DNA from: Zootoca vivipara
Lineage: Eukaryota
Assembly: GCF_963506605.1 (NCBI RefSeq)
Contig: NC_083281.1
Coordinates: forward strand, 88,102,001-88,166,000
DNA: 64,000 nucleotides
Reading direction: 5' to 3'
Shown here: positions 3,990 to 46,086 of the stretch, in pieces
Numbering within the stretch: position 1 is the stretch's first letter
Layout of the letters: every line of letters begins with the position of its first letter
Notes under the pieces: model-generated
The model's database searches: none
The model's input: only the letters and a program-made list of their open reading frames with translations
Told to the model about the DNA's origin: nothing
Made by a program: the position numbers and the translations under genes

Positions 3990-4087
3990 CTGTTGGGGAA
4001 GAGGGAGAGGAAAAGGAAAAGGGAGAGTCATTGGCACTGCACAAAGACATGGAAGAAGAACCTTCTGGATCAGGCCAGAGACCCATC

Positions 4088-9425: not shown

Positions 9426-9428
9426 GTT

Positions 9429-9446
9429 TGGCGACCACTTCGGGGA
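9429..9446 (+). other. Primer binding site, tRNA-Arg-like
   Basis: TGGCGACCACTTCGGGGA just after the LTR; the first 10 nt match the recalled tRNA-Arg PBS TGGCGACCACGAAGGGA, the rest is imperfect. Confidence 0.6.
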
Positions 9447-13600: not shown

Positions 13601-16195
13601 TAAATTAATTAAGAGGTTCAAGGTTATGCTTTGCACATGAAACTTAAATTTAAATTTCCTTATGTAAAAATAAATAAATAGATAAAGAACCATTGAGAAC
13701 CATCAACTGTTTAGAAGCTGCCAATTCCAGTTCAACATGCAAAACTCTGTACATTTTAGGAACATTTCCTGACTGATTTTCACATGAAATAATTTTCCCT
13801 TTCCAGCAGGATGCTGAGATTCAGGGTGCAGAAATTCTTTCAGGACCTTAATGCAAAATTATCTCCCAATGGGGGGGGGGGAGACGCCACCTAAACAAGC
13901 CCCCCCACACTTGGAAATTCATAGGAAATTGCGGTCTTCTCTTCATACTGCCCTGATGTGTACCTTTGGTCTGATCCAACCAGTTGACAGACTATGCAAA
14001 CAAAAGGCTCCATTTCTTTCCTAGCAGGTACTCAGGATGGATACTTATCTCTCATTTGCATTTCACCCCGAAGCATTACCCTATGTTAATATAACCCTCC
14101 CTTTTCTAATGTAGCAATGATTGAGTGTTTTGCCAATTCTTTTCTTCCACAGCAAAAAAAAAAAAGTGAGGAGTGAGGAGATACAAACAGTAATTTCATT
14201 TCTCTTTGGCGCTTCTCTTTAGCTTATAAATAATCTGCTTCCATTTATTATATCAGTTTTTCCATTATGTCTATGAAATTATTCTAACAATAACCAGGTA
14301 AAAATTGTTGTGTGAGTGGTAATCTAAATTTTATTATTTTATTTTTGTATCTTTTTTGGTATTTCTACTTTTTCTTTCTGTACATACAAATGTAGCATCT
14401 AAGTCATTCTTTCCTGTAAATAATAATAATATTAATCCCTTTCAAACAAGATACGTGAACCTCAAAGAGAATTCAGAACCACATAAGGAAAATGTTAATA
14501 ACTTATCGATTGGGTCCTAATTAACAAAATTTTTGTCCTTTGTTTCCTCCACAGCCAAACTAGGTGAAGTAAATTAAACAGACTGAGTAGACAATAACAG
14601 CAGTAATTAAATATGAATGATAATAATAATATTTAAATGAATAAAATGCCTAACTATGATCTTATATTATTTGCAGCTTCCCAAGAAGAAATTTCTAGAA
14701 TATTCTCCCCTTTCTTGACTATTTATTATTATTATTTTTAACTAATTATATCTTCAGGCCCCAACCCCCTGCAGGCCTATTTTCAAAAGGATGTGTATCA
14801 TTTACAGCTTCCCGACAATTTTTTTAGAAATACTGTAGGATATTCTCCCCTTTTGTTTTCCCACTCCTTCCTTCCTACGTAACTGTCTTTTAGTTCCAAG
14901 CACTCCTGTCCCTCTGCAGACTGTATTTCTGAAGACTGAATAATGAACCTACAGCAGCTGAACAGCATGAGAAAGCCCACAGCCATTGTTTCCATAAATG
15001 ACTTTTTTGGGACTTTTTGGGACTTAAGGGAGGGGGGAGAAAGGGGGGAACTATTGTTGAAAAGTTTTAAGGATTTTGACTATAAGACTGTTTCTTATCT
15101 GCAACAACAACAGACATCAGATTTTCCAAAGTAGCCACAGCATCTTCAAAATCTCCTTCCAAAAGAAACAGACTGAAGAGGGGCAAGGGAAAGTGAATTG
15201 CAAGGACATACGCTCTCTTTTGACTTCAAGACTCTGTGCCTATTAAGAATTGGCCTCAAGACATACAACTGATATAAATTATTATGTTTTATGTTGTGTG
15301 ATATTCGACAGAAACATTGAACTATGTCTGACAGTATGTTATTTCCACAAGGAGGGGGGGGTGAACCAATTTTGTGTTTAATTGTTTTTTAATGTTTAAT
15401 GTATAGTGTCCCAATGTTTTTTTTTGTATTATTGCCATGCATTGTATGCCTTTTAAAGGATCAGGATATTGCATAGTCCAGTATTTAGATTAGATCAAAT
15501 TATGACCACATTTTCTTGTCCCACCTGGCACTCTGCAGTGTGCCAGCCTTCTTACACAATTTTAGATTGTTTTAAATCATTTTACCAAGAATAAGCCCCA
15601 AGATCCATGAAACACCAGATAAATGAAGGTATTTATGTCTTGATTTAACAGGAATGATCCCTTTTAGAGTTAAATTTGACTAATTTGGACATGTTTTATT
15701 GGGCTGTATAAATTTTAATTTGGCTTCAGTTCTAATTGGGCAAGTGTATCCAAGGTGCAAGTAGCTTTCTTCCTTTAAGAGCAACTGGGCAACTCCCTAC
15801 AGTGCAAGGCCAGAGCCTATAATAATAAAGGCCCATAGGAAGCCCAAGGCAAAGGCATCTCTCTCATGACATGTCCAAACCTGTGGCAGCTATGGGGGGT
15901 GCCAGGCGACATGGTCAATATGAAAGCCCTAAGGGGATTCACCAGGGATTGTTGCTGTTGTGCCACGATGGAGGTGTGCAACCAGAGGAGAGCTAGCTTT
16001 TGACACCTGAAGAACACACAAAAGGGTAAACAAACAAACTGCACTTTCCAGTCAATATTGGTGGACCATCCTGTTAAATGAAATACGTACACCATTTTTG
16101 AGAAATGCTTCTCCCAAAGTACTAAAACAACACATCTGGTTATTCTTTTGTGGGGCAACAATTTTTAAGAAAAATTATAGCCCCAAATGGGGAAT

Positions 16196-16905
16196 TGTTA
16201 TAAGAATTTTAAGGTCATATATATATATAATAATTGTTCATAAAACATGTACATGAATGTACAGAAACATGTCTGAAGCAGCACAGGAAAACAGGCCTGA
16301 CTGACACCATTTTGACTCTCTCTGACCAGGTGTTCCTCTGCAAGGAAGAAGTGGGGTGGGGGGGAACCTTCTCATTGTCTCAGGAATTAAAGTGATAATC
16401 CCTGGCATCCTGATACCTGACTGCCAGACAAAAGGGTGTGATTAACTTGGCTGGGAAACAGGGAAATGTAAATATCTCTCAATTTTGTTGATTAGGTTCT
16501 GGGGGCAGGGGGCAGGGTCCAGGGTGCTCAGATTACTGCCACCAGACCTCCCCTTTCATGATGTACCTATGATGAATCTAGGGAGGGGGGGTCTTGGGCT
16601 ACACCCCTTCTGTGACATATGGATGATGCTTCTGGGGGGTGGGCTGAAACCAATTTCAAATCTCTTTTTAAGGACAAGACATCTTTGTTTGGGGGTTCCT
16701 TCCTTGTTCTCCTGTGTGAGAGGAAGGACCCTGTTGCAACAGCAAAAATAAAAGTGCCTTGCTTCGCACGTCCTGGTTTGGTCTCTGTTATTTGGTGGGC
16801 AGGAGACGCTTAAACTTTGTCTGCTTGCCAGGATACCTGGACTCTTCCTGGGTCAAGGATCCACTTAATTCTAGGGCCGTGTAGCTCTGCAAAATTTTTA
16901 CAACA
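16196..16905 (+). repeat. 3' LTR
   Basis: Identical to 8716-9425 at offset 7480; duplicated ORF-track entries 9005/16485 and 9139/16619. Confidence 0.95.
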
Positions 16906-18599: not shown

Positions 18600-19986
18600 C
18601 TTGGTCTCTTTCGGGAGCCCCTGCATGCCAGGCTATAAGCAGAGGAAAAGGCAGGAGTGTGTGAAATGGCAACAGCTGTGAGAAGCAGGGTTTAAATGGA
18701 CCACCGCAGCCCCTGGTGAGCAAATCAAGCTAGGGATTGCTTTTGCGTGATCTGACAGGGGAACAAAAGGAGGGGCTGGCAAGCTTATTGCAAAAGAGTC
18801 CCATCCTGGTATAAGTGTGTTTTTTTCCCTAAACGGGCAGCTTAACTTTTGCCCTCCTTCATGCCGGCTTTTGCAGACGCTGTCTGCACATCGCTCAGTT
18901 TCCATGGGAATGATGGGAGACGGATGGAGCGATGCAAGCATCCTGTCTTGGGCAATCTAACTGAACGCCTCGGGAATCTGGAACCACCCCCTGAGGCTGG
19001 CAGTTTTGAAATGAATGCAAGATGGGTCTAAGCAAAGCCAGCCAAATGGGGAAAAGAGCGCTGACAGACACTCGGCTGCTGGGCCGTTGACTGAGGGTGG
19101 TGCCATGCCTTCAGGCTCACATCGGCACCATACATTTACAACGCACCTTCCTATTTTCCTATTTGTATCTCTTGCAGCCAAAACCACAACTCTAGTCCGT
19201 GAAACTTCAAAGCATAATGCATTGAATGGCCTTTGAAGGTGCACACAAGGTTCTGTGTTGCTTCAGGAAGAACACGTTGCTGCTGCTGTCAGTGGAGACA
19301 TACTCCAACTGACCTAGCAGTTAGATGGTGTGATTTTGTTTCCATCTGATCCCTCTTAGCTCTTTTTCTTTTCATTGCTTTCTTTTCCACAAAACCATTT
19401 TTCTTTTTTCTCTCTGTTGCCCCCTTCTTCCTCCACCACTTCCCCCGACATTCCTTGAGGTCTCATGAGGCCCTAAGCTACTGAAGGTAATGGGGCCCTT
19501 TATATGTCCAGCTGTCCCACCTCTACAATGGATCGCGGGGAGGCTGCAAAGGAGGCCTTCTTCCCCTGAGGGTTCTGTCGCTGAAATGGCCAGCAGGAAG
19601 GGTAGCATACAAATTTAAGAAATTTGAGATATTAAGAAATCCCCACCTGCCATTCCCTGGGCATTAAAGCACCAGAACCTTCTCATATTGGAGCTCTCAC
19701 GGGGGTGAGAGGTTATGCGAACCCTGTTAGGATGTTGGAGGCAAAGCTCCATGAGGAAGAGAAGCAGAATTTATTGTTATTTCTATTTCCTATCAGGGAA
19801 TCCCTTGACTGGGCCAGTCCAGCCGCCTTCAGACCTTGGCCCTTGTCTGTGGGGCAACGCAGAGGCCTTGCAGTCACTTGCTCCCAGGAAAGGGGGTGTC
19901 AGGTCTTCTGTCTGCTCCTTGGGGTCTCCTGCTCTCAGCTGAGTCTGCATCACAAGGCAGGACAGGCTTCTGAAGCCTGCCTTGTG

Positions 19987-20060
19987 ATTGGCTGCCTAGT
20001 GCAAAGCAGCCAATCCTGCCCTCGGTGGGTGTCGCCAGGGGCGGGCGGAAATGTATATAA
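19987..20060 (+). promoter_or_regulatory. Putative Pol II promoter module (ATTGG, CCAAT, GC box, TATA)
   Basis: ATTGG 19987, CCAAT 20010, GGGGCGGGCGG 20038 and TATATAA 20054 in canonical order; motif inference only. Confidence 0.45.
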
Positions 20061-20833
20061 GCCCTGTTTTGCCAGTCTGCTCCGGAGGCCTCAAGGAAGC
20101 CTGGAGGCTGAATGGCTGCCTTAGCTCTTGCTTAAACTCACCTCTCTTCCCTCAGGGCTCAGGGGGAGGCCCTTTGTGAGGGCAAGGGGCCCTTGGAGCC
20201 AGGCTCCCTATTCTCCATAAACACCCACCCAGCCCATCCTGGAACCTAGTGTAGGATAACACGGTTGCAACTGAGCCCCTCAAGTGAGCCTGTGCGTTTG
20301 CCAGGCACTGCCTGGTGCTGCTGCCTGTGGGGCCCAGATAAGCCCCCCCCCAGGGGAATCTGAGAGGGGCTTGAGCCCCACAGCCCCCATGAAGTTGGGC
20401 ATGAAGGCCTACAGGGTCAGTTGCTGCATCTCTGTCCAAGAAGAGCTGGGGGTGGGGAAGGGCAGCTTGGCCCCAGCAGGACAGGACAGGACAGGACTTG
20501 CCTGGGGACATCTCAGGCCTCTCCTTGGGCCTTGGGGAAGGGGCTCTTCCTCTGCCTTCTTCCTCCACATCCCTTCCATTGGGTGTCTTGTCTTTGGACT
20601 TTCCAAACCTGAGGAAAGGACTTGTCTCACCTTCTTTTAAATCGATGTCAGCTGCTTTAGGAGACAACAAGAGTCTGCAAAGCAGGATAAAAACAAGAGG
20701 AAATGTATGAAACTGTACATTTCAAAGAACAGATATATCAGCCTTGAGTTGCATGGCATTAACATTGTTCTAACCACTAGGCCACACGGACTCTCCTAGA
20801 ACACTGGCACTGAGGCCGGGCATTCCACGTTCT

Positions 20834-20854
20834 CAACTGCCGTTGCCTAGCAGC
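20834..20854. promoter_or_regulatory. Adjacent MYB-like and RFX X-box-like motifs upstream of putative MROH-like exon 1
   Basis: CAACTGCC (reverse complement GGCAGTTG) abutting GTTGCCTAGCAGC; second X-box-like GTTGCCATGGCCAG at 20989. Confidence 0.4.
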
Positions 20855-20954
20855 GGAACTTGTGACCGTTTGAACTGAGGTTCCTGCATCCTCAGCATCT
20901 TGAGGTTGGCAGAGGTGGCCTGTAGTGACCTTCGCTCAGTCACTACATTAGAAG

Positions 20955-22534
20955 ATGGCGTCCCAAAGACTCCTGGAGGTAAGGGGAGGTTGCCATGGCC
21001 AGGGGACTTAACTCTGGAACCTAGATTAATGGTCTCACCAAGTTTGGCAAAGAGTCAAAGAAAGGGTTGAGCTTTGCCCAGGTTTTTGGAAGGGGAGAAA
21101 GAAGGAATGCCAAAAAGGAAAATTCAGTGTCCTATATTGCAGTCGATAGAAGATTATTTTGAACAAAGGATTCCTTCTGATTTATGTACATGGGAATCTG
21201 GGAGAAGCTTCATTTCTATTTCCACATGCTGGATGTTATCTTTGTACTATAGTTTGGAGGGAAAGGGAAAAACAGAAGGAGACATGAGAGCGTGAGCGGC
21301 TGGCCCAGTGGAGGGGAAGGGGGTGACGGATGGATCTGTTTTTTCTGCAGAGGCAGGGAGCCCTGCTGCCCACCTGTCCACAGAGTCCATTGCAGGAAAG
21401 GGCTGCTCCCAGGTGCAGGTGAGGGAGAGACAGGAGGCCTGGCGGAGCTCTATTCCTGGAGGAAGGACGGGTGAGAAACAGCGCCATGAGCTCTGCTGAG
21501 ACAGGCCAGCTCCCTCAGGCCTCCTCTCCCCCAACTGTCATCGGGCGGCAGCCATTTCATCAGGCTGTCTCAGTGGGAAAGATGAGAACAGCATTCTAGA
21601 CATTGGGGCCTGAGCTTGTGAGTTGTCTTTTCCTCTGCCCTCCTTGACCCCTTTCCTTGTGTACTGTATTTCTGTTGGTTAGATTGTTTGTTACAATAGA
21701 AGTCTGCCATTAGGGGGTTTCTTGCATTTGATTTCATGGAAGGCTCTCTTGGAGCCTTTTTGGCTTAAGAGAGGGGTACAAATGCTCTAAATCAGGGGTG
21801 GCCAACTTCCAAGACACTGTGATCTACCTGATAGAGTTAAAAACTGTCAGTGATCTACCCCCTTTTGGGGGATTCAGGTCAAAGTGTTGTTGAGCTTTTT
21901 TTAGGAAAGCCCTGTTTTGGGGGTTGCAGGCCAACATTATTGAACTTTTTTTAGGGGAGCCAACAAAGTTGTTGAGCTTGTTTGTGAGAAGCCAGTGATC
22001 TACCAGTAATCTACCACAAACATCAAGTGATCTACCGCTAAATCACAATCTACCTGTTGGATGTACCTACTCTAAATTAATGGATGGATGAATAAGGTCT
22101 CTAAGGAAATGGAGGACAGAGATTTTTAGTTTGTTTCCCAACCTACCACGTCTGCGCTTTCCTGATCAACACAAAAACATGAGTGGGTCTGATCCACTCC
22201 TCACATTCGGACGTTCCTGTTTCTCTTTTCTCATGGACAGGGAATTGATTTCGATGAGGATCAAATATCGGAAATCAGCCTAGAAGATGGGGAGGATCTT
22301 CCTCCAAGGTAATGCTATGCTAAACCCCCTCCCCCATAATCAATTGCTTTCAAAAGCCCCCCCCCCGTCCAATTCTATGGTGGTGGTGCTTGGGGTCTTT
22401 AAAGGAGGGGAGGCAATAAAACCTTTTTACACAAGTGCTACTCCTCTCTCCTCTCAGCATCCCAACCACAGGTTCTCCGGATACGGCTGATGTTCCTCTT
22501 GAAGGCTTCAGCGAGGACCAGCTGAAGGCCAGAC
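20955..22534 (+). other. Putative ancestral 5' coding exons of MROH-like copy 1 (20955-20978, 22241-22308, 22458-), now out of frame
   Basis: aagATGG MASQRLLE|gtaagg; GIDFDEDQISEISLEDGEDLPP|gt; phases are compatible using the 175-bp exon of copy 2, but that exon is 173 bp in copy 1. Confidence 0.5.
21793..22069. mobile_element. hAT MITE (GATCTAC-repeat family)
   Basis: CAGGGGTGGCCAAC ... GTTGGATGTACCTA; 8-bp TSD CTCTAAAT (21785-21792, 22070-22077). Confidence 0.88.
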
Positions 22535-25500
22535 ATGGATGTCGTCACCACGATGAAGAGCGGGAAGAAGATGGTCCGAAGGGAGGCGCTCCGAGATCTT
22601 TCCGCCCTCCTGCAGAAGATCCGGGAATATGTGAGTTTCTGAAGCAAAGCATTGCAACCATGCAGGGCTGTCAAGGCCTTCAGGCTGCCCCTTCTAGCCC
22701 CACCCTTCTCTTATCAGTTGCTTCTCTGGGTTTCTTCTCAGCCATCGGTATCGCTTCCTGCATCCTCCCTTGGCCAACTGGTGGCTATTTCCTGTCTGTG
22801 TGCCTTGGATCCAGACCCGGAGTGCAGGCAGCGGGCAGCAGAGGCTCTCTGCCATCTTCTGCCCATCCTGCGGCGTAAAGAAGGTAAGACTGAAAGAATG
22901 CATCCCAGAATGGGGTGGGGTGAGCAAGACCCCAACTAACCCTTTGGCTTTCCTTTGCAGAGACGCTGGCACGAACATCAAGGAACCCAACACTCATCAC
23001 CAGAGCTCAGAAGTTCCTCAATTCCACCGGAGGACCGGTTCCTGAATTGTTCGTCAACGACTGCTACTCTCTTGCCAGGGTAAGTCGCTGTCACACAAGG
23101 CACAGCGGTCTCTCAAGCCACATCTTCTGGGTTCCGCAGAGAAAGCACCTGGGCTTTCTGCTCCCCAGCCCTGCCCTGTGGGCACCTCTGACTTTCCTCT
23201 CTTGCTTCAGGTATTTGGCGCCTTTCTCCCTGCGGAGCAACTCTTGGAAGCCATGTCCTTCCTGGCCAGCAACCTGGTTCTTGAGAGCAGATTCCACCCC
23301 TTGGACATCTCCCACCTACTGCAAGAGTTCATCAAGCAGTTTAGCGGCAAAGCAGTGGAGGTAAGGTGTCTGCAAAGGTAGGAGAGAAGAAGAATCTCCA
23401 CCTTGATGTAGGGGAGGCAACCTCATGCCATTGAGTGGCCAGGACACATGTTTGTTGGGAGGGGCCTGGCAATGTCAGGACCAGAAGCGCAGCCAAGGGT
23501 CCTGAGAAACATGGGTTCAGGAATGGGGAACCCTCCTTCTGGGAGCAGCCTGGCAAGCTTCTTCTCTTGGCCCACAATGGAAAGGGAACTGGTTCCCTGC
23601 AGCTGCCTGGGTCCAATACTCCCAAGGACCCTGAGTGGTACCTTTGAAGGAAGATGGCTGTGGTGGCACAGGTCAAGGGTCCCTCTTTCTATGAGGGATG
23701 GAGGGATCCGCCTGCAGGCAGCCCCGCTTCCTTGTACTCTCCCAGCAACCTTCTCTTTTTCTCTGACAGGTGGAGGTGCTGCTGGAGGCCTTCTATAAGA
23801 TCACCCAGGGGCCTACAGTGGAGGGCAGAAACATGGCCATCTTTGCGTTCTCCATCTTGACACACCAGCATCTGAACAAAGTGGTTGAATACCTCCTCCA
23901 GTTTCCCTTCAGGTATGGAGCCCTCCAGGTTCTACTGGGCTAAGGGAAAGGTTGGCAAGCTGCAGGACTTGCTCAGAAAGCCCTTCCTGACATTTCCTCT
24001 CTCTGGGGCATGGCACCAAGCACAACACTGGAATCTGACCATTGCTCTTGTTTTTGCATTCACAGAGACTGCGAGAGAGTATGGAAGGAGGTTTTGACAT
24101 CGGCCGACCAAGAACAACTGCTCCATCTCATGGCCGAGCAGCTTTACCAAAGCCCCTTGGCGGAATCTGCCACCCAAGTGGTAAGGACGAACCACCTGCT
24201 TTCTGGCTTCCTTCTTCCCAGGGGAATATCGAGGGGTTTCTGTATTCTGCAGAAAAGCAGGGAAAGTGACTTGCACCTCTCTCTCTTCCAGCAACATCTC
24301 AGCAGCCTGTTGCACGCCATCCTCAGGATGGAGGAATACAAGGCAGCTGTGCGCCAGAACTTCCCACAGCTGCTGATCGCTCTCCTGGGGATGGTTGTCA
24401 ACTTCCACTATGACCAGGAATTCCTCGAGTGAGTAGCGTGTTGCAAAGGGGCCAATGGAGTCCTTTTCCCTTCAACCTCGGGGGGGGGGGGTGTTTTCCA
24501 GTCCAACTTGGTATTCTAAGGGAGCCTCTCCTTCAGGCGGCTGCTAGGGAGGCAGGATGCGGAAGGAATTTGAGTGGGTGGCAATGACCCTCCTGGTAAA
24601 ACTGGCCTTGCTTTTGTTACAGAGGGGCTAAGGAAGTTCTGCACCTCCTTCTCAGCACCACTGGAGAGCAAGTTGAGGCGGCCATCATTGACCAACTTTT
24701 CTGCCGGGACAATTTCAACCAGGGGTTGTCTGCCATGGTGAGGTAAGAGGAAGAACACGGTGACTTTCCCCAATGGTTTGGCAAACAGAGCTGAAGGCAC
24801 GGGATCGGACTGTGCCCCTGTTTGCTTCCTGCAGTGTCTTTCCCTTCCTTACCCACACCTGGTTCTCCATTTCAGAGCTGTCGGAAAGCGACGTTGGTGG
24901 ATCCGTCCCATGGTGGAAAATATCACCGCTGCTCTCGGGGACCAGGAGTTTGCCGGAATGCCAGAAGTAGCGGCAGCTATCTACATCGAGGTGAGGGGGA
25001 CTGACGCGGGAGGAAATGGGTGCAGCAAGGAGGCCCTGGCTTGGTTTCTGCCGAGTGTTGGGCTTTGTGTTCTTCGGCTCCCTTTGTGTCCTCCATTAGA
25101 ATTTGAACCTTGCAGCTGCCTTTACCTTCCATATTCTGTGGCTTTCCTCAAGGCTTCTTTGAGCCGAAGGAATGTTGCCTGTTTTAGTGCTCCTCAGAGT
25201 AGACCCAGTGGATTTGATGTACATGACGAACTTTGGTCCATTCCCTTCAGTGGCTTTGCTCTGTGCAGAACTACAGGTGGTAGATAAAAGGAGAACCTGC
25301 CTCAACCTCTCATCACTGAAGACTTTCTTTCTCTTTGGGCCTCTTTAGCTGCTCAGCTGCCGTCTGCAGGTTCCCTGTCAGGATACATTGGAGCAGCTCC
25401 ACACCTGGCTGTCACATGACCACCTGCAAGTCCAGAAGCTCAGCGCCAGAGGGATATCCCTGATTCTGGACTCTGACATGGCAAGTGATGCTCAGAGGGG

Positions 25501-27658
25501 GGAGGGGGGAGGGGGGTACAGATCCCGTTTCTAATCATGGGCCAGCACTCTTTTGCTGGCAGAATCCTGAAGGGCCTGTGAAACGAAAAAGTGTGGGGCC
25601 TAACAGACCTTTGAAAAGATTCTCTCTTTTGTGTAGGACCCTTCGCTTCTGCGGCTGTCGCTGCCGGATTTCTTCCCTGATGCAGAAGCTGATGTCTTCC
25701 CACAGATGTTAGAGCTAGTAGACCAAGCCTACATGAAGATGCTGGCGGCAACCTACTGTGATATGGCTTCACATGTGAGTATTAGGGAACACAGGACATC
25801 GCCCAGGGTGGAGGAGGAAGGGTGGTGTTTAGCCTGGCATGCAGCAGAGATCTTCTGGCTTCAGGAGCGTGTTCCTTCCTCTGGAGCACCTTCTCTTGGA
25901 AGCCTGCCTGGAAAACCCAGGGGGAGAGTCACCCCTGCCCCCAGTCTCCCCCAGGAGGAGGATAGGGGGCTGAGCAGCCTCAAAACACCTCGGTGGACAG
26001 GAGAAAGGAAACTGATCAGATGAGAAACACAACCTCTGATCTTTTCTGCCTACAGGAGGAAGCCTCCGTCCGGGCAGCAGCCATCCAATATCTGGGGCTG
26101 CTTCGGGGCTGGGCGAGAGACCAAAGGCTTCCCATAACAACAACTAAAGAAGAAGCCATTAATGAACTGGTCGTCGTCCTCATTCACCTCGAAGACGAGG
26201 ACGAGGTGGCCAAGGTGAGGGCCAAGGAGGTGGACTCACGCACGCAGTAGGAGGGAGGGATTGTTCTCAGGAGCTTCCGGGATTTTTTTTACGACAATTT
26301 GTAACCCTCTTCTCTTCTTGTGTTGCAGGCCGCAAGGAGGGCTCTTTCCCATCTAGCCCCACAAGTCAAGTGGTGGGCACATCCCAACAAATTTAGCCTC
26401 CACTTTGCTCTCCACCAGGCCGCCAAGCATCTGGTAAGGTCCCTCTGCTTCGTTGGCAGCTTTGCCCAGGGATGTCTTTGGGGGTGACGGGCTCTTGTGC
26501 CACACTCTCAAGCCTCTCTGATGCCACCTCTCCTTTGTCTTTGCCAACAGAGCAAGACCTTCAGCAAGAACATCCTTCGGAGTGCTGCCTTGGCATGTAC
26601 GAAGCCATCTGCCAACAGGCTGCCAGCAGTCTCCAGGGTAGCAGCTCTGCTTCTGGGTAAGTCAAGCAACGTCCTTCCCTGGTAGGAATGGACAGAAACG
26701 TTTTGGTAACAATGGCAGGGAGGATGGGCATGTCCCCAGGCCACCTGCTAGGTAGGGCTCCATCTGCGCCCAGATCTTGCTCTGAGTGCTCCCGAGAGGG
26801 TGGAGGCCCTCTGTCTCCGCTTGCTTTGCACCGAGATGACGTCCCTTTTCTTGCCTTGTCTCTCTAGGTCATCTGGCTTTCCGGGATGCCGGTTTCATCC
26901 ACAGTCAAGACATGGCATCCTACGGCACATGTAAGTGAGACATACAGAGGGCTGGGAGGGATGCTTCTGCTGAGAAAGGGCTTCAGGGGAAGGCAGGTTC
27001 CCAGGTGTATGTGCAGACAGAGGTGCCACAAGATGGACATGCAAAGAGAATTGGAATGTGACTTCATTGCTCTCTCTCACACACACAAATATTTCCCTGC
27101 CCCACACCCTGGTCCTGGGAGGAGCTCCGGTGGGGGTGCTTTGCAAGTTTTTGCCTTGTGAAAAGCTGATTCCTCCTCCCCAAGGGGAACCGCCACTGCT
27201 TGTGTCCTGGTTGGGGTAGATACCCTGTGGACTCCTGCATCCGCCCCTACAACCAGCGCACCTCCCCTGGCCCGATTGCTGGGGCCACCTGATGGCTGTC
27301 TTAATATTTTTGATGGATGGCTCTTTTCCTGTGCATCTCCGCCTTGCTCAACCTTTCTCCCTTGCCACTCAGGGCTGGAAGAGATGCAGCAGTACGAGGA
27401 AGAAGGGCTCAGGCGGACAGGGAGGAGCTGCCTGAACATCATGCAGCGGGCCTATAAACATCGGCAGAAAGGCAGGGTCCGGCGCCTTGTGAGGAGGCTG
27501 CTCTGCTGTATTCACAGGGAACCTTACCCGCAGGACTTCCTGAGCTGCATGCCAGGTGAGTGAGGCACCTGGTGGGCTATTTGGGCATCTGGTGGGCTGT
27601 TTGGAGGTGACATTTCTCAAGGAGCCCCTTTCTCCTCCTGACAGAACTTCCGCAGTAG
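22535..27658 (+). CDS. Maestro HEAT-like repeat (MROH-family) protein, copy 1; 17 coding exons, ~678 aa
   Basis: Exons 22535-22630, 22742-22883, 22961-23079, 23211-23360, 23770-23912, 24066-24180, 24292-24428, 24623-24742, 24876-24990, 25349-25480 (GC donor), 25637-25774, 26056-26214, 26329-26433, 26551-26656, 26868-26930, 27373-27555 and 27645-27658 total 2037 nt, all phases compatible, no internal stop. Motifs LDPDPECRQRAAEAL, FPQLLIALL, VQKLSARGI, VRAAAIQYLG and LVVVLIHLED..VAKAA resemble MROH HEAT repeats. Confidence 0.75.
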
Positions 27659-28625
27659 CGCCAGGCCAAGGCAACGTGAACATCAGAGTTGTGCTGCAGA
27701 GATACCGTCTTCTGCTCTCCGTGGGATCCAGCCTGGATCAGCGCCAGGAACATCAAGGCCATCAGGATCGACCAAGAGGAGTGGTGCTGCCCTCACGGCC
27801 CTCCTTACATAGCGGTAGGAAACCTTTTGTTGTTGTTGTCTTTTTTGTTGATGTTGGTTTTGACTGTTGATGTTAACTAGTCCACGATCTGGTCGATCTT
27901 TCCTTTCTTGTTTTCCCTTTGTTGGGGGTCCCGCCCCCAGGACAGGCAGGCTTTATGGAGCTCCCCCAGTCCAGGGTCCGGTTCCTTGCAGGACTCTCTG
28001 CCGTCCTCTCAAGTCCTCCCCAGCAGCAACTTTCTTCCATTTCTTTGCTTATTCGCCAACAGCAGGGATTGTTAGGGGCGGGGGCAATAAGAGGGTCTAA
28101 CATTCATGAGATTTCGTACCCTTTCTAACAGAATCTCTTTTCTCTCTTTCCTGCATGGAACAAAACCGCGATGGGAAACGGCGGCCTATCTGCTGGAGCC
28201 TGGGAGGAGACGTCCGGATAAAAGAAGAATGTCATCAGCCGCGAAAGAAGCCGCCCTGAAGACGACACCTGCAACATCGACCCTCCAGCTGGCAGTGAAT
28301 TTCAGGACTGGACACTTTCTATTGACTCTTTCGGGACTTAAAACAGCAAGCGGGACTTTCTTTAGTAAGATAGGTTGAAATGGATGTATAGAATAGGATA
28401 GGCAAAACAGGGAGCATTCAAGGTTACGAGATAGTGTTTTGTATATTATTTTTGTTCCTTCTTTCTTTGTTCTCCCCCCCCACTTCCCCCCTTTGTATCA
28501 CTTGATTTCTTTATAATTGTAATTCTCTTATTAAAAATATTTTTAAAAGGGTAAATACGGATCTTATGGTTTTTGTTAAAATGTGCAAAAATATCATTTT
28601 GTCAAAAATGAATAAATAATATTTT

Positions 28626-29755: not shown

Positions 29756-32105
29756 AGAGCATTTGTACCCCTCTCTTAAGCCAAAAAGGCTCCAAGAGGG
29801 CCTTCCATGAAATCAAATGCAAGAAACTCCCTAATGGCAGACTTCTATTGTAATAAACAATCTGACCAACAGAAATACAACACACAAGGAAAGGGGGCAA
29901 GGAGGGCAGAGGAAAAGACAACTCACAAGCTCAGGCCCCAATGTTTGGAAAGCACCCATTGGAGTCGGCACTCCTGGAAACCACCCGATGCGGGCACGGG
30001 TCCCATAACTTGGAATTTTAATTAGATAAAAGTTTTCGGCATGCCTCAGATAAAGGAGCAAAAAAATTATTGCCTGCGGACTCAGCCCTGAGCAGTAGAA
30101 AAAAAGACTTGATTTACGGCCAATAAGAGGTAAGAGGTGGAAACATCGGAGAAAGGAAGATGGATTATCTGGAGAAACCGAGAAGCCTGACAGGGAAGTG
30201 GAACCCCCCCCCCTTTTCTTCTTCTTCTTCTTCTCTTAAACATAATACTCAACACCTTTTCTGGACGGCTATCGGAATTACCTAGAGCAGCGGGAAAATA
30301 GAAAATACCAAACTGTGTGGACATGGAAATATAAACAATATAAAAATGGAGGCTTTATATATGCTTTGATGATTTTGTAAAAGTCTCCCTGACAGCTGGT
30401 ACTCGTTGGGATTCGTCGTGGACTGATTTAGAAGATTTAAGACTTGTGTCGCAGTTAGAAATTGAGAAAACACAAAATGGCCCCAAAACGGAGAGCAGCT
30501 AGAGGCGGGGAAGAAGCCATTGTTTGTTTTTAGAAGAACGATAAGATTTGACCTGGCTAATTCCTCGCTGGAAAAGCTGTAAATCTGTTTTCGGAGAAGC
30601 TATGGAGTAGAAATTTGGACATGATTTGTGCTTTGTGTGCTTTGTTGGGCTTGGAAGACCAGCGATCAGAGGGAGACTTAAAGCCACACGATAGAAAAAT
30701 TTTCGGTAAAACCTGGCTGGCACCATAACTCAGAGGCTTGGAGAAGATTGAAGGATGTCAACAAAGACTGTTAGGAAAGGACTGTATTATTTTGGGACAA
30801 TATTGAAGGTTTACATTTCAGGCTGAATAACAAGGGAGAAATTATTAAAAGCAAAAGGCAGTAGTGATTAGTAGGAAGCTCTGGAATCTGAGGCATGGTG
30901 AGTGGGAAAAAATTAATATAATTGGGCATAATTGGAATGTTTCCTTTAATTGGAATTGTATAATTAATTTGGAAAAAGTGTAATTGGGAATAATTTCAAT
31001 GTAATTCGATGTTGTTTAATTGGAAAATCTAATAAAAATCATTTAAAAAATGGAAAGTCCAAAGACAAGACACCCAATGGAAGGGATGTGGAGGAAGAAG
31101 GCAGAGGAAGAGCCCCTTTCCCAAGGAGAGGCCTGAGATGTCCCCAGGCAAGTCCTGTCCTGTCCTGTCCTGCTGGGGCCAAGCTCCCCTTCCCCACCCC
31201 CAGCTCTTCTTGGACAGAGATGCAGCAACTGATCCTGTAGGCCTTCATGCCCAACTTCATGGGGGCTGTGGGGCTCAAGCCCCTCTCAGATTCCCCTGGG
31301 GGGGGGCTTATCTGGGCCCCACAGGCAGCACCAGGCAGTGCCTGGCAAACACACAGGCTCACTTGAGGGGCTCAGTTGCAACTGCCTTATCCTACACTAG
31401 GTTCCAGCATGGGCTGGGTGGGTGTTTATGGAGAATAGGGAGCCTGGCTCCAAAGGCCCCTTGTCCTCACAAAGGGCCTCCCCCTGAGCCCTGAGGGAAG
31501 AGAGGTGAGTTTAAGCAAGAGCCAAGGCAGCCATTCAGCCTCTAGGCTTCCTTGAGGCCTCCAGAGCAGACTGGCGAAACAGGGCTTATATACACTTCCG
31601 CACGCCCCTGGCGACACCCACCGAGGGCAGGATTGGCTGCTTTCCACTAGGCAGCCAATCACAAGGCAGGCTTCAGAAGCGGACTCAGCGGAGAGCAGGA
31701 GACCCCAAGGAGCAGACAGAAGACCTGACACCCCCCCTTTCCTGGGAGCAAGCGACTGCAAGGCCTCTGCGTTGCCCCACAGACAAGGGCCAAGGTCTGA
31801 AGGCGGCTGGACTGGATCAGTCAAGGGCCTCCCAGATAGGAAATAGAAATAACAATAAATTCCGCTTCTCTTCCTCATGGAGCTTTGCCTCCAACATCCT
31901 AACGGGGTTCGCATAACCTCTCACCCCCCCCCCCGAGAGCTCCAATATGGGAAGGTTCTGGTGCTTTAATGCCCAGGGAATGGCAGGTGGGCATGAGGAT
32001 TTCTTAAATTTGTATGATACCCTTCATGCTGGCCATTTCAGGGACAGAACCCTCAAGGGAAGAAGGCCTCCTTTGCAGCCTCCCCGCGATCCATTGTAGA
32101 GGTGG
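29756..32105 (-). repeat. Right (inverted) arm; lacks the equivalent of 20611-21599 and carries a retro-insertion
   Basis: Direct alignment to the left arm; includes mirrored TTATATA 31586-31592 and CCAAT boxes 31632-31659. Confidence 0.9.
29953..31050 (+). mobile_element. Short L1-like non-autonomous retroelement
   Basis: CpG-containing 5' part, AT-rich 3' end with AATAAA and A tail, 7-bp TSD TGGAAAG (29946-29952, 31051-31057). Confidence 0.6.
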
Positions 32106-39659: not shown

Positions 39660-39660
39660 G

Positions 39661-40862: not shown

Positions 40863-43800
40863 GGAATTGATTTCGACGAGGATCAAATATCGGAAATCAG
40901 CCTAGAAGATGGGGAGGATCTTCCTCCAAGGTAATGCTATGCTAAACCCCCTCCCCCATAATCAATTGCTTTCAAAAGCCCCCCCCCCCGGCCAATTCTA
41001 TGGTGGTGGTGCTTGGGGTCTTTGGAGGAGGGGCAATAAAACCTTTTTAGACAAGTGCTACTCCTCTCTCCTCTCAGCATCCCAACCACAGGTTCTCCGG
41101 ATGCGGCTGATGTTCCTCCTGAAAGCTTCAGCGAGGACCAGCTGAAGGCCAGACTTACGGATGTCGTCACCACGATGAAGAGTGGGAAGAAGATGGTCCG
41201 AAGGGAGGCGCTCCGAGATCTTTCCGCCCTCCTGCAGAAGATCCAGGAATATGTGAGTTTCTGAAAGGAAGCATTGCAACCATGCAGGGCTGTCAAGGCC
41301 TTCAGGCTGCCCCTTCTAGCCCCACCCTTCTCTTATCAGTTCCTTCTCTGGGTTTCTTCTCAGCCATCGGTAGTGCTTCCTGCATCCTCCCTTGGCCAAC
41401 TGGTGGCTATTTCCTGCCTGTGTGCCTTGGATCCAGACCCGGAGTGCAGGCAGCGGGCAGCAGAGGCCCTCTGCCATCTTCTGCCCATCCTGCGGCATAA
41501 AGAGGGTAAGACTGAAAGAATGCATCCCAGAATGGGGTGGGGTGAGCAAGACCCCAACTAACCCTTTGGCTTTCCTTTGCAGAGACGCTGGCATGAACAT
41601 CAAGGAACCAAACACTCATCACCAGAGCTCAGAAGTTCCTCAATTCCACCGGAGGACCGGTTCCTGAAATGTTCGTCAATGACTGCTACTCTCTTGCCAG
41701 GATAAGTCGCTGTCACACAAGGCATAGCAGTCTCTCAAGCCACATGTTCTGGGTTCCGCAGAGAAAGCTTTCTGCTCCCCAGCCCTGCCCTGTGGGCACC
41801 TCTGACCTTCCTCTCTTGCTTCAGGTCTTTGGCGCCTTTCTCCCTGCGGAGCAACTCTTGGAAGCCATGTGCTTCCTGGCCAGCAACCTGGTTCTTGAGA
41901 GCAGATTCAACCCCTTAGACATCTCCCACCTACTGCAAGAGTTCATCAAGCAGTTTAGCGGCAAAGCAGTGGAGGTAAGGTGTCTGCAAAGGTAGGAGAG
42001 AAGAAGAATCTCCACCTTGATGTAGGGGAGGCAACCTCATGCCATTGAGTGGCCAGGACACATGTTTGTTGGGAGGGGCCTGGCAATGTCAGGACAAGAA
42101 GCTCAGCCAAGGGTCCTGAGAAACATGGGTTCAGGAATGGGGAATCCTCCTTCTGGGAGCAGCCTGGCAAGCTTCTTCTCTTGGCGCACAATGGAAAGGG
42201 AACTGGTTCCCTGGAGCTGCCTGGCTCCAATACTCCCAAGGACCCTGAGTGGTACCTTTGAAGGAAGATGGCTGTGGTGGCACAGGTCAAGGGTCCCTCT
42301 TTCTATGAGGGATGGAGGGATCCGCCTGCAGGCAGCCCCGCTTCCTTGTACTCTCCCAGCAACCTTCTCTTTTTCTCTGACAGGTGGAGGTGCTGCTGGA
42401 GGCCTTCTATAAGATCACCCAGGGGCCTACAGTGGAGGGCAGAAACATGGCCATCTTTGCTATCTCCGCCTTGACACACCAGCATCTGAAGAAAGTGGTT
42501 GGATATCTCCTCCAGTTTCCCTTCAGGTATGGAGCCCTCCAGGTTCTACTGGGCTAAGGGAAAGGTTGGCAAGCTGCAGGGCTTGCTCAGAAAGCCCTTC
42601 CTGCCATTTCCTCTCTCTGGGGCATGGCAGCTAGCAGAACACTTGAATCTGATCATTGCTCTTGTTTTTGCATTCACAGAGACTGTGAGAGAGTATGGAA
42701 GGAGGTTTTGACATTGGCCGACCAAGAACAACTGCTCCATCTCATGGCCGAGCAGCTTTACCAAAGCCCCTTGGCGGAATCTTCCACCCAAGTGGTAAGG
42801 ACGAACCACCTGCTTTCTGGCTTCCTTCTTCCCAGGGGAATATTGAGGGGTTCCTGTATTCTGCAGAAAAGCAGGGAAAGTGACTTGCACCTCTCTCTCT
42901 TCCAGCAGCATCTCACCAGCCTGTTGCACGCCATCCTCAGGATGGAGGAATACAAGGCAGCTGTGCGCCATAACTTCCCGCAGCTGCTGATCGCTCTCCT
43001 GGGGATGGTTGTCAACTTCCACTATGACCAGGAATTCCTTGGGTGAGTAGCGTGTTGCAAAGGGGCCAATGGAGTCCTTTTCCCTTCAACCTCGGGGGGT
43101 TTCCAGTCCAACCTGGTTTTCTAAGGGAGGCTCTCCTTCAGGCGGCTGCTGGTGAGGAAGGATGGAGAAGGAATTTGAGTGGGTGGCAATGACCCTCCTG
43201 GTAAAACTGGCCTTGCTTTTGTTACAGAGGGGCTAAGGAAGTACTCCACCTCCTTCTTGGCATGGTGAGGTAAGAGGAAGAACCTTCCCCAATGGTCTGG
43301 CAAACAGAGCTGAAGGCATGGGATTGGACTGTGCCCCTGTTTGCTTCCTGCGGTGTCTTTCCGTTCCTTACCCAGACCTGGTTCTCCATTTCAGAGCTGT
43401 CGGAAAGCGACGTTGGTGGATCCATCCCATGGTGGAAAATATCACCGCTGCTCTCGGGGACCAGGAGTTTGCCGGAATGCCAGAAGTAGCGGCAGCTATC
43501 TACATCGAGGTGAGGGGGACTGACGCGGGAGGAAATGGGTGCAGCAAGGAGGCCCTGGCTTGGTTTCTGCCGAGTGTTGGGCTTTGTGTTCTTCGGCTCC
43601 CTTTGTGTCCTTGGTTCCCCAACCAGCCTCCATTAGAATCTGAACCTTGCAGCTGCCTTTACCTTCCATATTCTGTGGCTTTCCTCAAGGCTTCTTTGAG
43701 CCGAAGGACTGTTGCCTGTTTTAGTGCTCCTCAGAGTAGACCCAGTGGATTTGATGTACGTGACGAACTTTGGTCCATTCCCTTCAGTGGCTTTGCTCTG

Positions 43801-46086
43801 TGCAGAACTACAGGTGGTGGATAAAAGGAGAACCTGCCTCAACCTCTCATCACTGAAGACTTTCTTTCTCTTTGGGCCTCTTTAGCTGCTCAGCTGCCGT
43901 CTGCAGGTCCCCTGTCAGGATACATTGGAGCAGCTCCACACCTGGCTGTCACATGACCACCTGCAAGTCCAGAAGCTCAGCGCCCGAGGGATATCCCTGA
44001 TTCTGGACTCTGACATGGCAAGTGATGCTCAGAGGGGTGAGGGGGGTACAGATCCCCTTTCTAATCATGGCCCAGCACTCTTTTGCTGGCAGAATCCTGA
44101 AGGGCCTGTGAAACAAAAAAGTGTGGAGCATAACAGACCTTTGAAATGATTCTCTCTTTTGTGTAGGACCCTTCGCTTCTGCGGCTGTCGCTGCCGAATT
44201 TCTTCCCTGATGCAGAGGCTGATGTCTTCCCAGAGATCTTAGAGCTGGTAGACCAAGCCTACATGAAGATGCTGGCGGCAACCTACTGTGGTATGGCTGC
44301 ACATGTGAGTATTAGGGAACATCAGAGAGTATTAGGGAACATCACACAGGGTGGAGGAGGAATGCTTTGGAAGAGGAAGGGTGGTGTTTAGCCTGGCATG
44401 CAGCGGAGAGGAAACTGATCAGATGAGAAACACAAACACTGATCTTTTCTGCCTACAGGAGCAAGCCTCCGTCCGGGCAGAAGCCATCCAATATCTGGGT
44501 GCTGCTTCGGGGCTGGGCAAAAGACCAAAGGCTTCCCATAACAACAACTAAAGAAGAAGCCATTAATGAACTGGTCGTCGTCCTCATTCACCTCGAAGAC
44601 GAGGATGAGGTGGCCAAGGTGAGGGCCAAGGAAATGGACTCATGCAGTAGGAGGGAGGGATTGTTCTCAGAAGCTTCCAGGATATATTTTTTTTACGGCA
44701 ATTTGTAACCCTCTTCTCTTCTTGTGTTGCAGGCCGCAAGGAGGGCTCTTTCCCATCTAGCCCCACAAGTCAATTGGTCGGCGCATCCCAACAAATTTAG
44801 CTTCCACTTTGTTCTCCACCAGGCTGCCAAGCATCTGGTAAGGTCCCTCTGCTTCGTTGCCAGCTTTGCCCAGGGATGTCTTTGGGGGTGACAGGCTCTT
44901 CTCCCACACTCTCAAGCCTCTCTGATGCCACCTCTCCTTTGTCTTTGCCAACAGAGCAAGACCTTCAGCAAGAACATCCTTCGGAGTGCTGCCTTGGCAT
45001 GTACGAAGCCATCTGCCAACAGGCTGCCAGCAGTCTCCAGGGTAGCAGCTCTGCTTCTGGGTAAGTTAAGCAACGTCCTTCCCTGGTAGGGATGGACAGA
45101 AACGTTTTGGTAACAATGGCAGGGAGGATGGGCATGTCCCCAGGCCACCTGCTAGGTAGGGCTCCATCTGCACCCAGATCTTGCTCTGAGTGCTCCCGAG
45201 AGGGTGGAGGCATCAGAGCATACCTGTCTTCCTGCAGAGCTGCCTCTGTCTCCACTTGCTTTGCACCGAGATGATGTCCCTTTTCTTGCCCTGTCTCTCT
45301 CTAGGTCATCTGGCTTTCCAGGATGCCGATTTCATCCACAGTCAAGACATGGCATCCTACAGCACATGTGAGACATACGGAGTGCTGGGAGGGATGCTTC
45401 TGCTGACAAAGGGCTTCAGGGGAAGGCAGGTTCCCAGGTGTATGTGCAGACAGAGGTGCCACAAGATGAACATGCAAAGAGGATTGGAATGTGACTTCAT
45501 TGCTCTCTCTCACACACACAAATATTCCCGTCCCACACCCTGGTCCTGGGAGGAGCTCTGGTGGGGTGCATTGCAAGTTTTTGCCTTGTGAAAAGCTGAT
45601 TCCTCCTCCCCAAGGGGAACAATCACTGTTTGTGTCCTGGTTGGGGTGGATACCCTGTGGACTCCTGCATCCGCCCCTACAAACAGCGCACCTCCCCTGG
45701 CCCGATTGCTGGGGCCACCTGACGGCTGTCTTAATATTTTTGATGGATGGCTCTTTTCCTGTGCATCTCCGCCTTGCTCAACCTTTCTCCCTTGCCACTC
45801 AGGGCTGGAAGAGATGCAGCAGCACGAGGAAGAAGGGCTCAGGCGGACAGGGAGGAGCTGCCTGAACATCATGCAGCGGGCCTATAAACATCGGCAGAAA
45901 GGCAGGGTCCGGCGCCTTGTGAGGAGGCTGCTCTGCTGTATTCACAGGGAACCTTACCCGCAGGACTTCCTGAGCTGCATGCCAGGTGTGAGGCATCTGG
46001 TGGGCTATTTGGACATCTGGTGGGCTGTTTGGAGGTGACATTTCTCAAGGAGCCCCTTTCTCCTCCTGACAGAACATCCGCAGTAG
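40863..46086 (+). pseudogene. MROH-like copy 2, pseudogene
   Basis: Same exons as copy 1, but CGA>TGA at 41594-41596, donor GT>AT at 41702, 78-bp exon deletion (43228-43269 vs 24623-24742), +1 frameshift near 44500, and no attached exon 1. Confidence 0.85.

What the first reader, a model, noticed from the sequence alone, without database searches (positions are those of the whole stretch)
22535..27658. Hidden, highly divergent MROH/HEAT-repeat gene between LDLRAD2 and USP48
Seen: 17 short exons with small introns splice in frame to ~678 aa of Leu/Ala-rich helical repeats ending in a basic RRLVRRLLCC segment; the ORF track shows only fragments. Known: I recall no such gene between these neighbours in human, and MROH-like genes are prone to lineage-specific expansion in sauropsids. 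Inference: a fast-evolving squamate MROH subfamily undergoing birth-and-death here; the basic di-Cys tail could be a palmitoylation/membrane anchor.
Basis: partly seen in the sequence, partly recalled or inferred. Interest (0 to 1): 0.8.

Follow-up and report, generated by a model that had tools for sequence, protein, structure and literature searches.

The report
Truncated lizard MROH gene copy
The 17-exon reading frame is real, but it is one more copy of a HEAT-repeat (Maestro/MROH) gene family already annotated and amplified in lacertid lizards; a 2-base deletion cuts this copy off from its normal start codon, and a dead twin lies 18.6 kb downstream.

Summary
Seventeen exons at 22535-27658(+) join in frame to 678 aa through 15 GT-AG introns and one GC-AG intron.

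It is not an unknown gene. It is 87% identical to RefSeq "MROH7" of Zootoca vivipara and about 80% identical to Podarcis paralogues. Exon 2 alone passes the Pfam HEAT_Maestro threshold. The modelled relative is an all-helical solenoid.

- The family gene has 19 coding exons, and two more lie upstream (20955-20978 and 22241-22308). Exon 1 really starts at 22458.
- A 2-bp deletion just before ATG 22535 breaks the frame from the ancestral start.
- A 95.7% identical tandem twin at 40863-46086 is a pseudogene: nonsense codon, lost splice donor, 78-bp deletion, +1 frameshift, no first exon.

Copy A has no indel in 2037 exon bases where about 5.3 are expected (P = 0.005), so its body has been under selection. 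Whether it still makes protein is open. My estimate is about 45% shortened but coding, 37% young pseudogene and 13% assembly error or polymorphism.

RNA support is thin. The di-Cys "lipid anchor" is confined to these two copies.

This scan already reported an intact array of the same family on another piece of this genome (s1-853477). This is an ordinary lineage-specific gene family turning over.

The parts
20955..20978 (+). Ancestral first coding exon of copy A (start codon plus 7 codons, MASQRLLE; donor GTAAGG)
   Evidence: A fuzzy six-frame search found a single hit for the N-terminus of Zootoca P0011 and P0013. Sequence and donor were read, and the phase fits exon 0.
22241..22308 (+). Second coding exon of copy A (acidic GIDFDEDQ... 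segment)
   Evidence: tblastn with the N-terminus of P0009 gives 93.5% identity at 22214-22306. Acceptor and donor were read.
22458..22630 (+). A 2-bp deletion relative to copy B and the family frame lies between 22534 and 22535.
   Evidence: The A/B alignment shows 2 extra bases in B here. Copy B reads through in frame. Relatives have KARLMDVV or KARLTEVV. Read from ATG 20955, copy A hits a stop at 22876-22878.
22742..27658 (+). Exon 2 carries the HEAT_Maestro match; exon 16 carries the basic Cys-Cys helix.
   Evidence: model; Pfam on exon 2: 32.1 bits against a cut-off of 27.4; spliced contigs at introns 4, 6, 7, 13, 14, 15, 16; 86.6% identity to P0011.
40863..46086 (+). Copy B, the pseudogene twin. 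Lesions: Arg84 to stop (about 41594); exon-3 donor GT>AT (41702-41703); 78-bp deletion in exon 8 (after 43260); +1 base in exon 12 (about 44500); Met>Thr at 41157-41159; no first coding exon upstream in direct orientation.
21935..28423 (.). Duplicated block A, 95.7% identical to 40567-47526
   Evidence: Self-blastn and MAFFT alignment.
29756..32105 (-). Inverted copy of the region upstream of copy A (A 19517-20605 and 21591-21788). It lacks the 985-bp block 20606-21590 that holds the first coding exon.

Best explanation
Near certain: this is one copy of the short Maestro/MROH ("MROH7-like") HEAT-repeat gene family that is amplified in lacertid lizards. It encodes an all-helical alpha-solenoid, the kind of protein that acts as a scaffold for binding other proteins. 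No function has been shown for any MROH protein.

The canonical gene has 19 coding exons and about 735-750 aa. Here a 2-bp deletion in the third coding exon puts the ancestral start (20955) out of frame. The remaining 678 codons start at the ancestral internal Met (22535).

My leaning (inferred): the body is still kept by selection and is translated from Met 22535 as an N-terminally shortened protein without the acidic 57-residue head, probably from transcripts that start downstream of the old first exon. The tandem twin (copy B) is dead.
For: Identity:
- Pfam HEAT_Maestro on exon 2 alone scores 32.1 bits against a cut-off of 27.4. Relatives score 74-84 bits.
- The copy is 86.6% identical to Zootoca 'MROH7' P0011 and about 80% to Podarcis paralogues.
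- The nearest ESM-Atlas clusters are all MROH.
- The AlphaFold model of P0011 has about 35 helices, and its best Foldseek matches are karyopherin-beta2, SF3B1, CAND1 and PR65.

Selection on the body:
- There is no indel in 2037 exon nt, against 5.3 expected from the intron indel density (P = 0.005). There is no new stop (P = 0.29 under neutrality) and all 32 splice dinucleotides are intact (P = 0.32). The joint probability is about 5e-4.
- The twin, of the same age, carries five lesions.
- Pairwise dN/dS is 0.46, significantly below 1 (P = 0.005).

Tolerance of the truncation:
- Four Podarcis RefSeq models (P0003, P0010, P0012, P0015) start at or 6 residues after the same Met. P0014 reads the first exons in a shifted frame.
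- The 26 codons upstream of the break changed about 5 times faster in copy A than the body did (2 of 26 against 11 of 650, P = 0.09).
- ATG 22535 has G at -3 and G at +4.
Against: - In a canonical transcript the strong ancestral AUG (A at -3, G at +4) opens a 133-codon frame. That frame overlaps ATG 22535 and ends in exon 2, 1793 nt before the last junction, which predicts poor translation and nonsense-mediated decay. Three more upstream AUGs lie in the leader.
- No transcript start downstream of 20955 was shown.
- Three RNA-seq runs of the same species label gave only 4-8 reads each from about 6% of each run, and several of those reads carry copy-B letters.
- The spliced contigs of run X4 are only 95-99% alike and match neither copy, so they come from other paralogues.
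- Copy A's 11 derived amino-acid changes hit family-conserved sites about as often as the pseudogene's 17 do, and 11 against 17 is not significant (P = 0.34).
- The A/B lineage has a long stem in the tree (0.073).
Confidence: 0.45

Rival explanations
1. Young pseudogene. The 2-bp deletion abolished translation of the MROH protein fairly recently. The 678-codon frame is intact only because too little time has passed, and copy A is following copy B into decay.
For: - The frameshift separates the body from the only start used by intact family members.
- An overlapping upstream ORF and a premature stop are predicted.
- Expression is near zero in three RNA runs.
- Derived changes fall at invariant sites such as G465D, A468S and C135S.
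- The A/B lineage is fast and the twin is already dead.
- If RefSeq LOC132592383 (P0002, 98.7% identical over exons 5-8) is this locus, it was modelled only as a 210-aa aberrant ORF.
Against: The body shows clear depletion of indels, stops and splice-site losses over the whole branch since duplication (joint P about 5e-4). The neutral phase would therefore have to be short. Yet the codons upstream of the break already look faster-evolving than the body. Several Podarcis paralogues are modelled with the same shortened start.
Confidence: 0.37
2. The 2-bp gap is an assembly error or a segregating allele. The real gene, or the common allele, is a full-length 19-exon, 735-aa family member read from ATG 20955.
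For: With X at the break the frame runs 735 aa from ATG 20955 to the stop with no other lesion. The missing TG sits in a short TGATGGATG repeat where slippage or a consensus error is plausible (sequence). All other signs point to a selected gene.
Against: No read evidence for the missing bases: no row of inserted letters appeared, although coverage of the site was almost nil. The codons upstream of the break show excess change in copy A.
Confidence: 0.13
3. One reading: a previously unrecognised, highly divergent squamate MROH subfamily whose basic Cys-Cys tail is a palmitoylated membrane anchor.
For: Beyond squamates only profile-level similarity was found. phmmer with exons 6-7 found 7 representatives among 1.84 billion. 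Word-index searches reached only Lacertidae, Hemicordylus and Phrynosoma. One Cys in the basic helix is conserved from lacertids to Hemicordylus.
Against: The subfamily is already in RefSeq and UniRef with Pfam domains assigned. The Cys-Cys pair is private to copies A and B, one of which is dead. The segment is internal, 21 residues from the end, and in relative P0011 the corresponding part is modelled as the last solenoid helix.
Confidence: 0.04

Closest known systems
Lacertid short MROH genes in RefSeq (Zootoca vivipara 'MROH7' P0011, LOC132591210 P0013, LOC118095861 P0016; Podarcis raffonei LOC128419851 P0003, LOC128419819 P0009, 'MROH7' P0010)
   Same: The exon-by-exon order is collinear and identity is 80-87% over the whole 678 aa. 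The Pfam HEAT_Maestro match is the same, the C-terminal basic helix and ...REPYPQDFLSCMPE tail are shared, and the genes are multi-copy on single chromosomes.
   Different: Copy A has lost the frame to the first 57 codons. It and copy B share a private 9-codon deletion in exon 11, a 2-codon insertion in exon 1 and His>Cys in the tail. Together with B it forms its own clade outside the Zootoca and Podarcis clades. Synteny of the relatives could not be checked.
Zootoca vivipara LOC132592383 (P0002, 210 aa)
   Same: It is 98.7% identical to copy A over exons 5-8, including the part of exon 8 that copy B has lost. It is spliced at the same junctions 5/6, 6/7 and 7/8.
   Different: It differs at 2 of 149 aligned residues and uses a donor 5 nt upstream in exon 8, so it ends in a shifted frame. 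It is either the RefSeq model of this locus in another assembly or allele, or a third close copy. This was not resolvable here.
Mammalian MROH family (MRO, MROH1, 2A, 2B, 5-9; PMC5391009)
   Same: HEAT_Maestro domain and an all-helical repeat fold. The nearest language-model clusters are named MROH9, MROH6, MROH7 and MROH8. Function is unknown in both.
   Different: There is no detectable pairwise sequence similarity. Length is 680-750 aa against roughly 1300 aa for the Atlas clusters named MROH7 and MROH5, which also carry HEAT_Maestro_2 (PF23210); that domain was not found here. Orthology to MROH7 is only a label from automatic naming.
Canonical HEAT solenoids (karyopherin-beta2, SF3B1, CAND1, PP2A PR65)
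   Same: Best structural matches of the model: Foldseek E 3e-7 to 5e-5, probability 1.00.
   Different: TM-scores are only 0.2-0.25 and sequence identity is 10-14%. The shared feature is the fold class, not a family, and nothing points to a transport or splicing role.

Membership tests
Maestro/MROH HEAT-repeat family (Pfam PF21047 HEAT_Maestro) | Match to PF21047 above its gathering score | tested here: met
   Window exon 2 alone scores 32.1 bits against a cut-off of 27.4. Exon 5 matches later profile positions in the right order at 14.9 bits. Relatives P0003, P0011, P0021 and P0022 score 84, 74, 51 and 58 bits.
Maestro/MROH HEAT-repeat family | C-terminal MROH2B-like HEAT domain (PF23227) | tested here: inconclusive
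   It is listed in the precomputed Pfam columns for most relatives and in all nearest Atlas clusters. My own hmmscan of P0003, P0011, P0021 and P0022 did not return it at E <= 1 or 0.01, and no window exon hit it.
Maestro/MROH HEAT-repeat family | All-alpha HEAT/ARM solenoid fold | tested here: met
Tested on proxy P0011 (86.6% identical). The model has about 35 helices and no strands, with pLDDT above 80 over residues 250-600. The top PDB matches are HEAT solenoids.
Orthologue of mammalian MROH7 | Length of about 1300 aa with HEAT_Maestro_2 (PF23210), and conserved synteny | tested here: not met
   Length is 678-751 aa with no PF23210 hit. The locus sits between an LDLRAD2-like and a USP48-like gene. 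Phylogenetic orthology was not testable because no non-squamate sequences were retrieved.
Lacertid short-MROH array genes | 19 coding exons, about 735-750 aa, and an open frame from the MAS(P/Q)R... start | tested here: not met
   All 19 exons are present, but the 2-bp deletion at 22534/22535 breaks the frame and gives a stop at 22876-22878. Without the break the frame is 735 aa.
Lacertid short-MROH array genes | High full-length identity and collinearity with RefSeq members | tested here: met
   Identity is 86.6% to P0011, 87.4% to P0016 and 80% to P0003, P0009 and P0010 over essentially the full length. The copy sits inside the lacertid clade with 100/100 support.
Processed (retro)pseudogene | No introns, poly-A tail | tested here: not met
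   Both copies keep all 16 or more introns. They arose by a segmental duplication of about 6.5 kb.

The most novel reading that the evidence does not exclude
Copy A is a living neo-gene. After moving next to USP48, a short MROH copy lost its acidic head, gained a private Cys-Cys in its basic terminal helix (possible S-acylation and membrane tethering), and is kept by selection as a new isoform. It would belong to a rapidly amplifying, fast-evolving, possibly germline-expressed family engaged in some form of genetic conflict in lacertids.
Probability: 0.08. Interest if true: 0.5.

Novelty: new member of a known kind. Interest (0 to 1): 0.25.

Why it matters
The locus is mostly a correction for annotation: a real multi-exon gene copy with a broken start, beside a dead twin, in a family that RefSeq already lists. 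Its modest value is as a dated snapshot of birth and death in a lineage-amplified MROH family whose function is unknown in any vertebrate. One duplicate is decapitated and decayed. The other keeps 678 codons under measurable constraint after losing its N-terminus. That makes the dispensability of the acidic head, and the fate of the duplicates, directly testable.

Tried and rejected
**Searches that led nowhere**
No orthologous DNA could be fetched, so there is no synteny check and no cross-species dN/dS.
- Word-index protein searches with Hemicordylus P0021 and with family profile A1 reached nothing beyond squamates.
- phmmer with the stop-free stretch 23944-24429, which spans exons 6-7, gave only 7 representatives.
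- A PDB sequence search with the profile gave no hit.
- Pfam on the other 15 exon pieces gave nothing significant.
- Paper searches found nothing on MROH amplification in lizards. There was only general MROH background (PMC5391009) and an Anolis outlier-SNP mention of MROH7 (PMC5574798).

**Limits on the read evidence**
- Reads were laid on RNA runs. The DNA runs X7-X10 could therefore not be used to verify the 2-bp deletion.

**Ideas rejected**
- Chance ORFs: rejected by homology.
- Retrocopy: rejected because the introns are kept.
- A 'new' ATG at 22535: the Met is ancestral. Zootoca P0011 and P0013 have it, and copy B mutated it to Thr.
- A cryptic acceptor at 22526-22527 would restore the frame from exon 0, but it has no pyrimidine tract.
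- Run X4 contigs as evidence for expression of copy A: rejected, because their variant letters fit neither A nor B.

- It was used only in local scripts against fetched proteins. RefSeq relatives P0003 and P0011 served as proxies.
Full report
**1. The observation**

Reading 22300-27900 in three frames and joining the coding-looking pieces at consensus splice sites gives 17 exons from ATG 22535 to stop 27656-27658. They total 2037 nt, or 678 codons, with no internal stop. Introns are 77-442 bp. Fifteen are GT-AG and intron 10 is GC-AG. The GC donor is also present in the paralogous copy. The protein is rich in Leu (14.6%) and Ala (10.5%). It has the basic Cys-Cys segment in exon 16.

**2. What it is**

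Exons were searched by reference.

- Exon 2 alone matches Pfam HEAT_Maestro (PF21047) at 32.1 bits, against a gathering score of 27.4. Exon 5 matches later positions of the same profile in the right order. The other exons gave nothing.
- phmmer with the stop-free stretch 23944-24429, which contains exons 6 and 7, found only 7 representatives among 1.84 billion. One was a 681-aa protein, P0003.
- With P0003 as proxy, the word-index search returned 16 proteins. Fourteen are from lacertid lizards (Podarcis raffonei, P. lilfordi, P. muralis, Zootoca vivipara). They are named either "maestro heat-like repeat-containing protein family member 7" or "uncharacterized protein LOC...". Two more come from Hemicordylus capensis at 42-43% identity.
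- A Phrynosoma relative appeared with P0021 as query.
- In a local blastp the window model is 86.6% identical to Zootoca "MROH7" P0011, 87.4% to Zootoca P0016, about 80% to the Podarcis proteins and 41% to Hemicordylus.
- P0003, P0011, P0021 and P0022 score 84, 74, 51 and 58 bits on HEAT_Maestro.
- The nearest ESM-Atlas clusters of P0011 are all MROH clusters: MROH9, 6, 7, 8, 5 and 1.
- An AlphaFold2 model of P0011 from a 13-sequence alignment is entirely helical, with about 35 helices, mean pLDDT 68 and values above 80 over residues 250-600.
- Its best Foldseek matches in the PDB are classical HEAT solenoids: karyopherin-beta2, SF3B1, CAND1 and PR65 (E down to 3e-7, TM 0.2-0.25).
- A profile search of PDB sequences found nothing.

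The gene is therefore a member of the Maestro/MROH HEAT-repeat superfamily. More precisely, it belongs to a short (about 700-750 aa) squamate subfamily that RefSeq already lists. The label "MROH7" comes from automatic naming. The Atlas clusters named MROH7 are about 1300 aa and carry HEAT_Maestro_2, which was not found here.

**3. Surroundings**

- On the minus strand, 1680-1907 encodes an LDL-receptor class A module and 3490-4086 encodes part of a CUB domain.
- On the plus strand from about 51 kb there are UCH and DUSP domain exons.

**4.

Self-comparison shows that 21935-28423 is duplicated at 40567-47526, with 95.7% identity. Mapped exon by exon, copy B (40863-46086) carries these lesions:
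- a CGA>TGA nonsense codon at residue 84;
- a GT>AT change at the exon-3 donor;
- a 78-bp deletion inside exon 8;
- a +1 insertion in exon 12;
- ATG>ACG at the position of copy A's start.

Its upstream region has also been rearranged. Sequence matching A 19517-20605 and 21591-21788 lies inverted at 32105-31051 and 29953-29756. The 985-bp block of A that carries the first coding exon has no counterpart there. Copy B is a decapitated pseudogene.

**5.

The longer relatives (P0009, P0011, P0013) start about 57-60 residues earlier. tblastn and a motif search place these residues in the window:
- a first coding exon at 20955-20978 (MASQRLLE, donor GTAAGG);
- a second coding exon at 22241-22308;
- an extension of "exon 1" back to an acceptor at 22458.

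In copy B the frame runs straight through (...EDQLKARLTDVV...). In Zootoca P0011 the same place reads ...KARLMDVV.... Copy A lacks two bases exactly between 22534 and 22535.

The ATG at 22535 is therefore the ancestral internal Met, not a new start, and the canonical frame is broken. Read from ATG 20955, copy A runs into a stop at 22876-22878 in exon 2, 1793 nt before the last exon junction. With X at the break the frame is 735 aa with no other lesion.

The leader of a canonical transcript holds four AUGs. The first has a strong context, and its 133-codon frame overlaps ATG 22535.

**6. Is copy A alive?**

Evidence for constraint:
- The A-B alignment has 16 indels in 3087 intron bases but only 2 in 2037 exon bases, both in B. 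Copy A has none where 5.3 are expected (P = 0.005).
- With no new stop (P = 0.29 by simulation) and no lost splice dinucleotide (P = 0.32), the joint probability of such an intact frame under neutrality since the duplication is about 5e-4.
- Pairwise dN/dS is 0.46 (dN 0.025, dS 0.055; Fisher P = 0.005).
- Four Podarcis RefSeq models begin at or just after the same Met, and P0014 reads the first exons in shifted frames. The acidic head thus seems often lost in this family.
- In copy A the 26 codons upstream of the break carry 2 derived replacements, against 11 in the 650 comparable codons of the body (P = 0.09). This suggests the break is not brand new while the body stayed constrained.

Evidence against:
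- The overlapping upstream frame predicts poor translation and nonsense-mediated decay.
- Polarised with nine relatives, 11 amino-acid changes are derived in A and 17 in B. The difference is not significant (P = 0.34). A's changes hit family-invariant sites as often as B's do.
- The A/B stem in the tree is long (0.073, against 0.018 for the clade of the other Zootoca copies).

**7. RNA evidence**

No indexed run on record as RNA holds the stretch. In three raw RNA-seq runs of the same species label, about 6% of each run was read and 6, 4 and 8 reads were laid. One read spans intron 4 and one spans intron 14. The exon-11 reads of X11 carry copy-B letters.

Contigs of run X4 are spliced exactly at introns 4, 6, 7, 13, 14, 15 and 16. 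They are only 95-99% alike. Most of their variant letters fit neither A nor B, and some lie inside the segment that B has lost. They therefore come from other paralogues. The apparent off-by-one at intron 7 is explained by A's private A at 24428, where the family has G.

The exon structure is thus confirmed for the family. Expression of copy A itself is not shown, and the tissues of the runs are unknown.

**8. Family dynamics**

A maximum-likelihood tree of 18 proteins was built from A, B (read in A's frame with X at the breaks) and 16 relatives. The fused or short models P0008, P0001, P0002 and P0023 were left out. Copies A and B join with 100/100 support. They sit in a polytomy with a Zootoca clade and a Podarcis clade, with Hemicordylus and Phrynosoma outside.

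Paralogues of one genus group together. Several share one chromosome-sized contig: four in P. raffonei, and five listed here in P. muralis (P0001, P0015, P0017, P0019, P0023). This fits repeated local duplication and loss, although gene conversion would give the same picture.

A follow-up on another piece of this genome (s1-853477) reported a tandem array of intact 19-exon, roughly 750-aa copies. It named the species as Zootoca vivipara. That agrees with what I see but was not re-tested here.

**9. The C-terminal tail**

The Cys-Cys pair is private to copies A and B. Zootoca and Podarcis relatives have His-Cys and Hemicordylus has Arg-Cys. The segment lies 21 residues from the end. In relative P0011 the corresponding part is modelled as the last long helix of the solenoid. 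Nothing here supports a lipid anchor, and it cannot be tested with these tools.

**10. P0002**

Zootoca LOC132592383 (210 aa) is 98.7% identical to copy A over exons 5-8. It then shifts frame through a donor 5 nt upstream in exon 8. It is either RefSeq's model of this very locus in another assembly or allele, or a third close copy. I could not decide between these.

**11. Verdict**

The finding is a real gene copy of a known, already annotated, lineage-amplified family. The window captures one dead duplicate and one duplicate that has lost its start but whose body has been under selection. My estimates:
- about 45%: still coding as a 678-aa N-terminally shortened HEAT scaffold;
- about 37%: a young pseudogene;
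- about 13%: the 2-bp gap is an assembly error or polymorphism, and the gene is a normal 735-aa member.

Noticed in passing
window 8716-16905: Two 710-bp direct repeats (8716-9425 and 16196-16905) are 100% identical and 7.5 kb apart, as in the LTRs of a very young LTR element or provirus. Another first-stage note (s1-852692) covers it.
   Followed up: no
window 38757-40080 (+): A 300-aa coiled-coil-like ORF is followed by a 148-aa ORF with an endonuclease-like start. It looks like a LINE insertion directly upstream of copy B, where that copy's promoter and first exon should be.
   Followed up: no
window 21787-21951, 36999-37158, 55878-56146: A repeat of about 165-270 bp (81-86% identity, both orientations) sits at the 5' edge of duplicated block A and at two other places. 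Run X4 shows depth 45.8 over 21935-22133, as expected of a repeat. Another note (s1-852661) reads it as a hAT MITE at the inversion breakpoints.
   Followed up: partly
window 20606-21590 versus 29954-31050: Inside the inverted duplicate of copy A's upstream region, a 985-bp block holding the ancestral first coding exon is replaced by 1097 bp of unrelated sequence. The origin of the replacing sequence is unknown.
   Followed up: partly
window 133-425, 2272-2467, 7372-7701: Short interspersed repeats (83-96% identity, both orientations) lie around the LDLRAD2-like gene.
   Followed up: no
window 24738-24743: Two donors lie 5 nt apart at the end of exon 8. RefSeq model P0002 uses the upstream one, which shifts the frame. 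This is a possible unproductive splice variant in this family.
   Followed up: partly
window 25481-25636: Intron 10 has a GC-AG boundary conserved in both copies. A P. lilfordi RefSeq model (P0008) reads 10 extra residues here, as if the GC donor had been missed by the predictor.
   Followed up: partly
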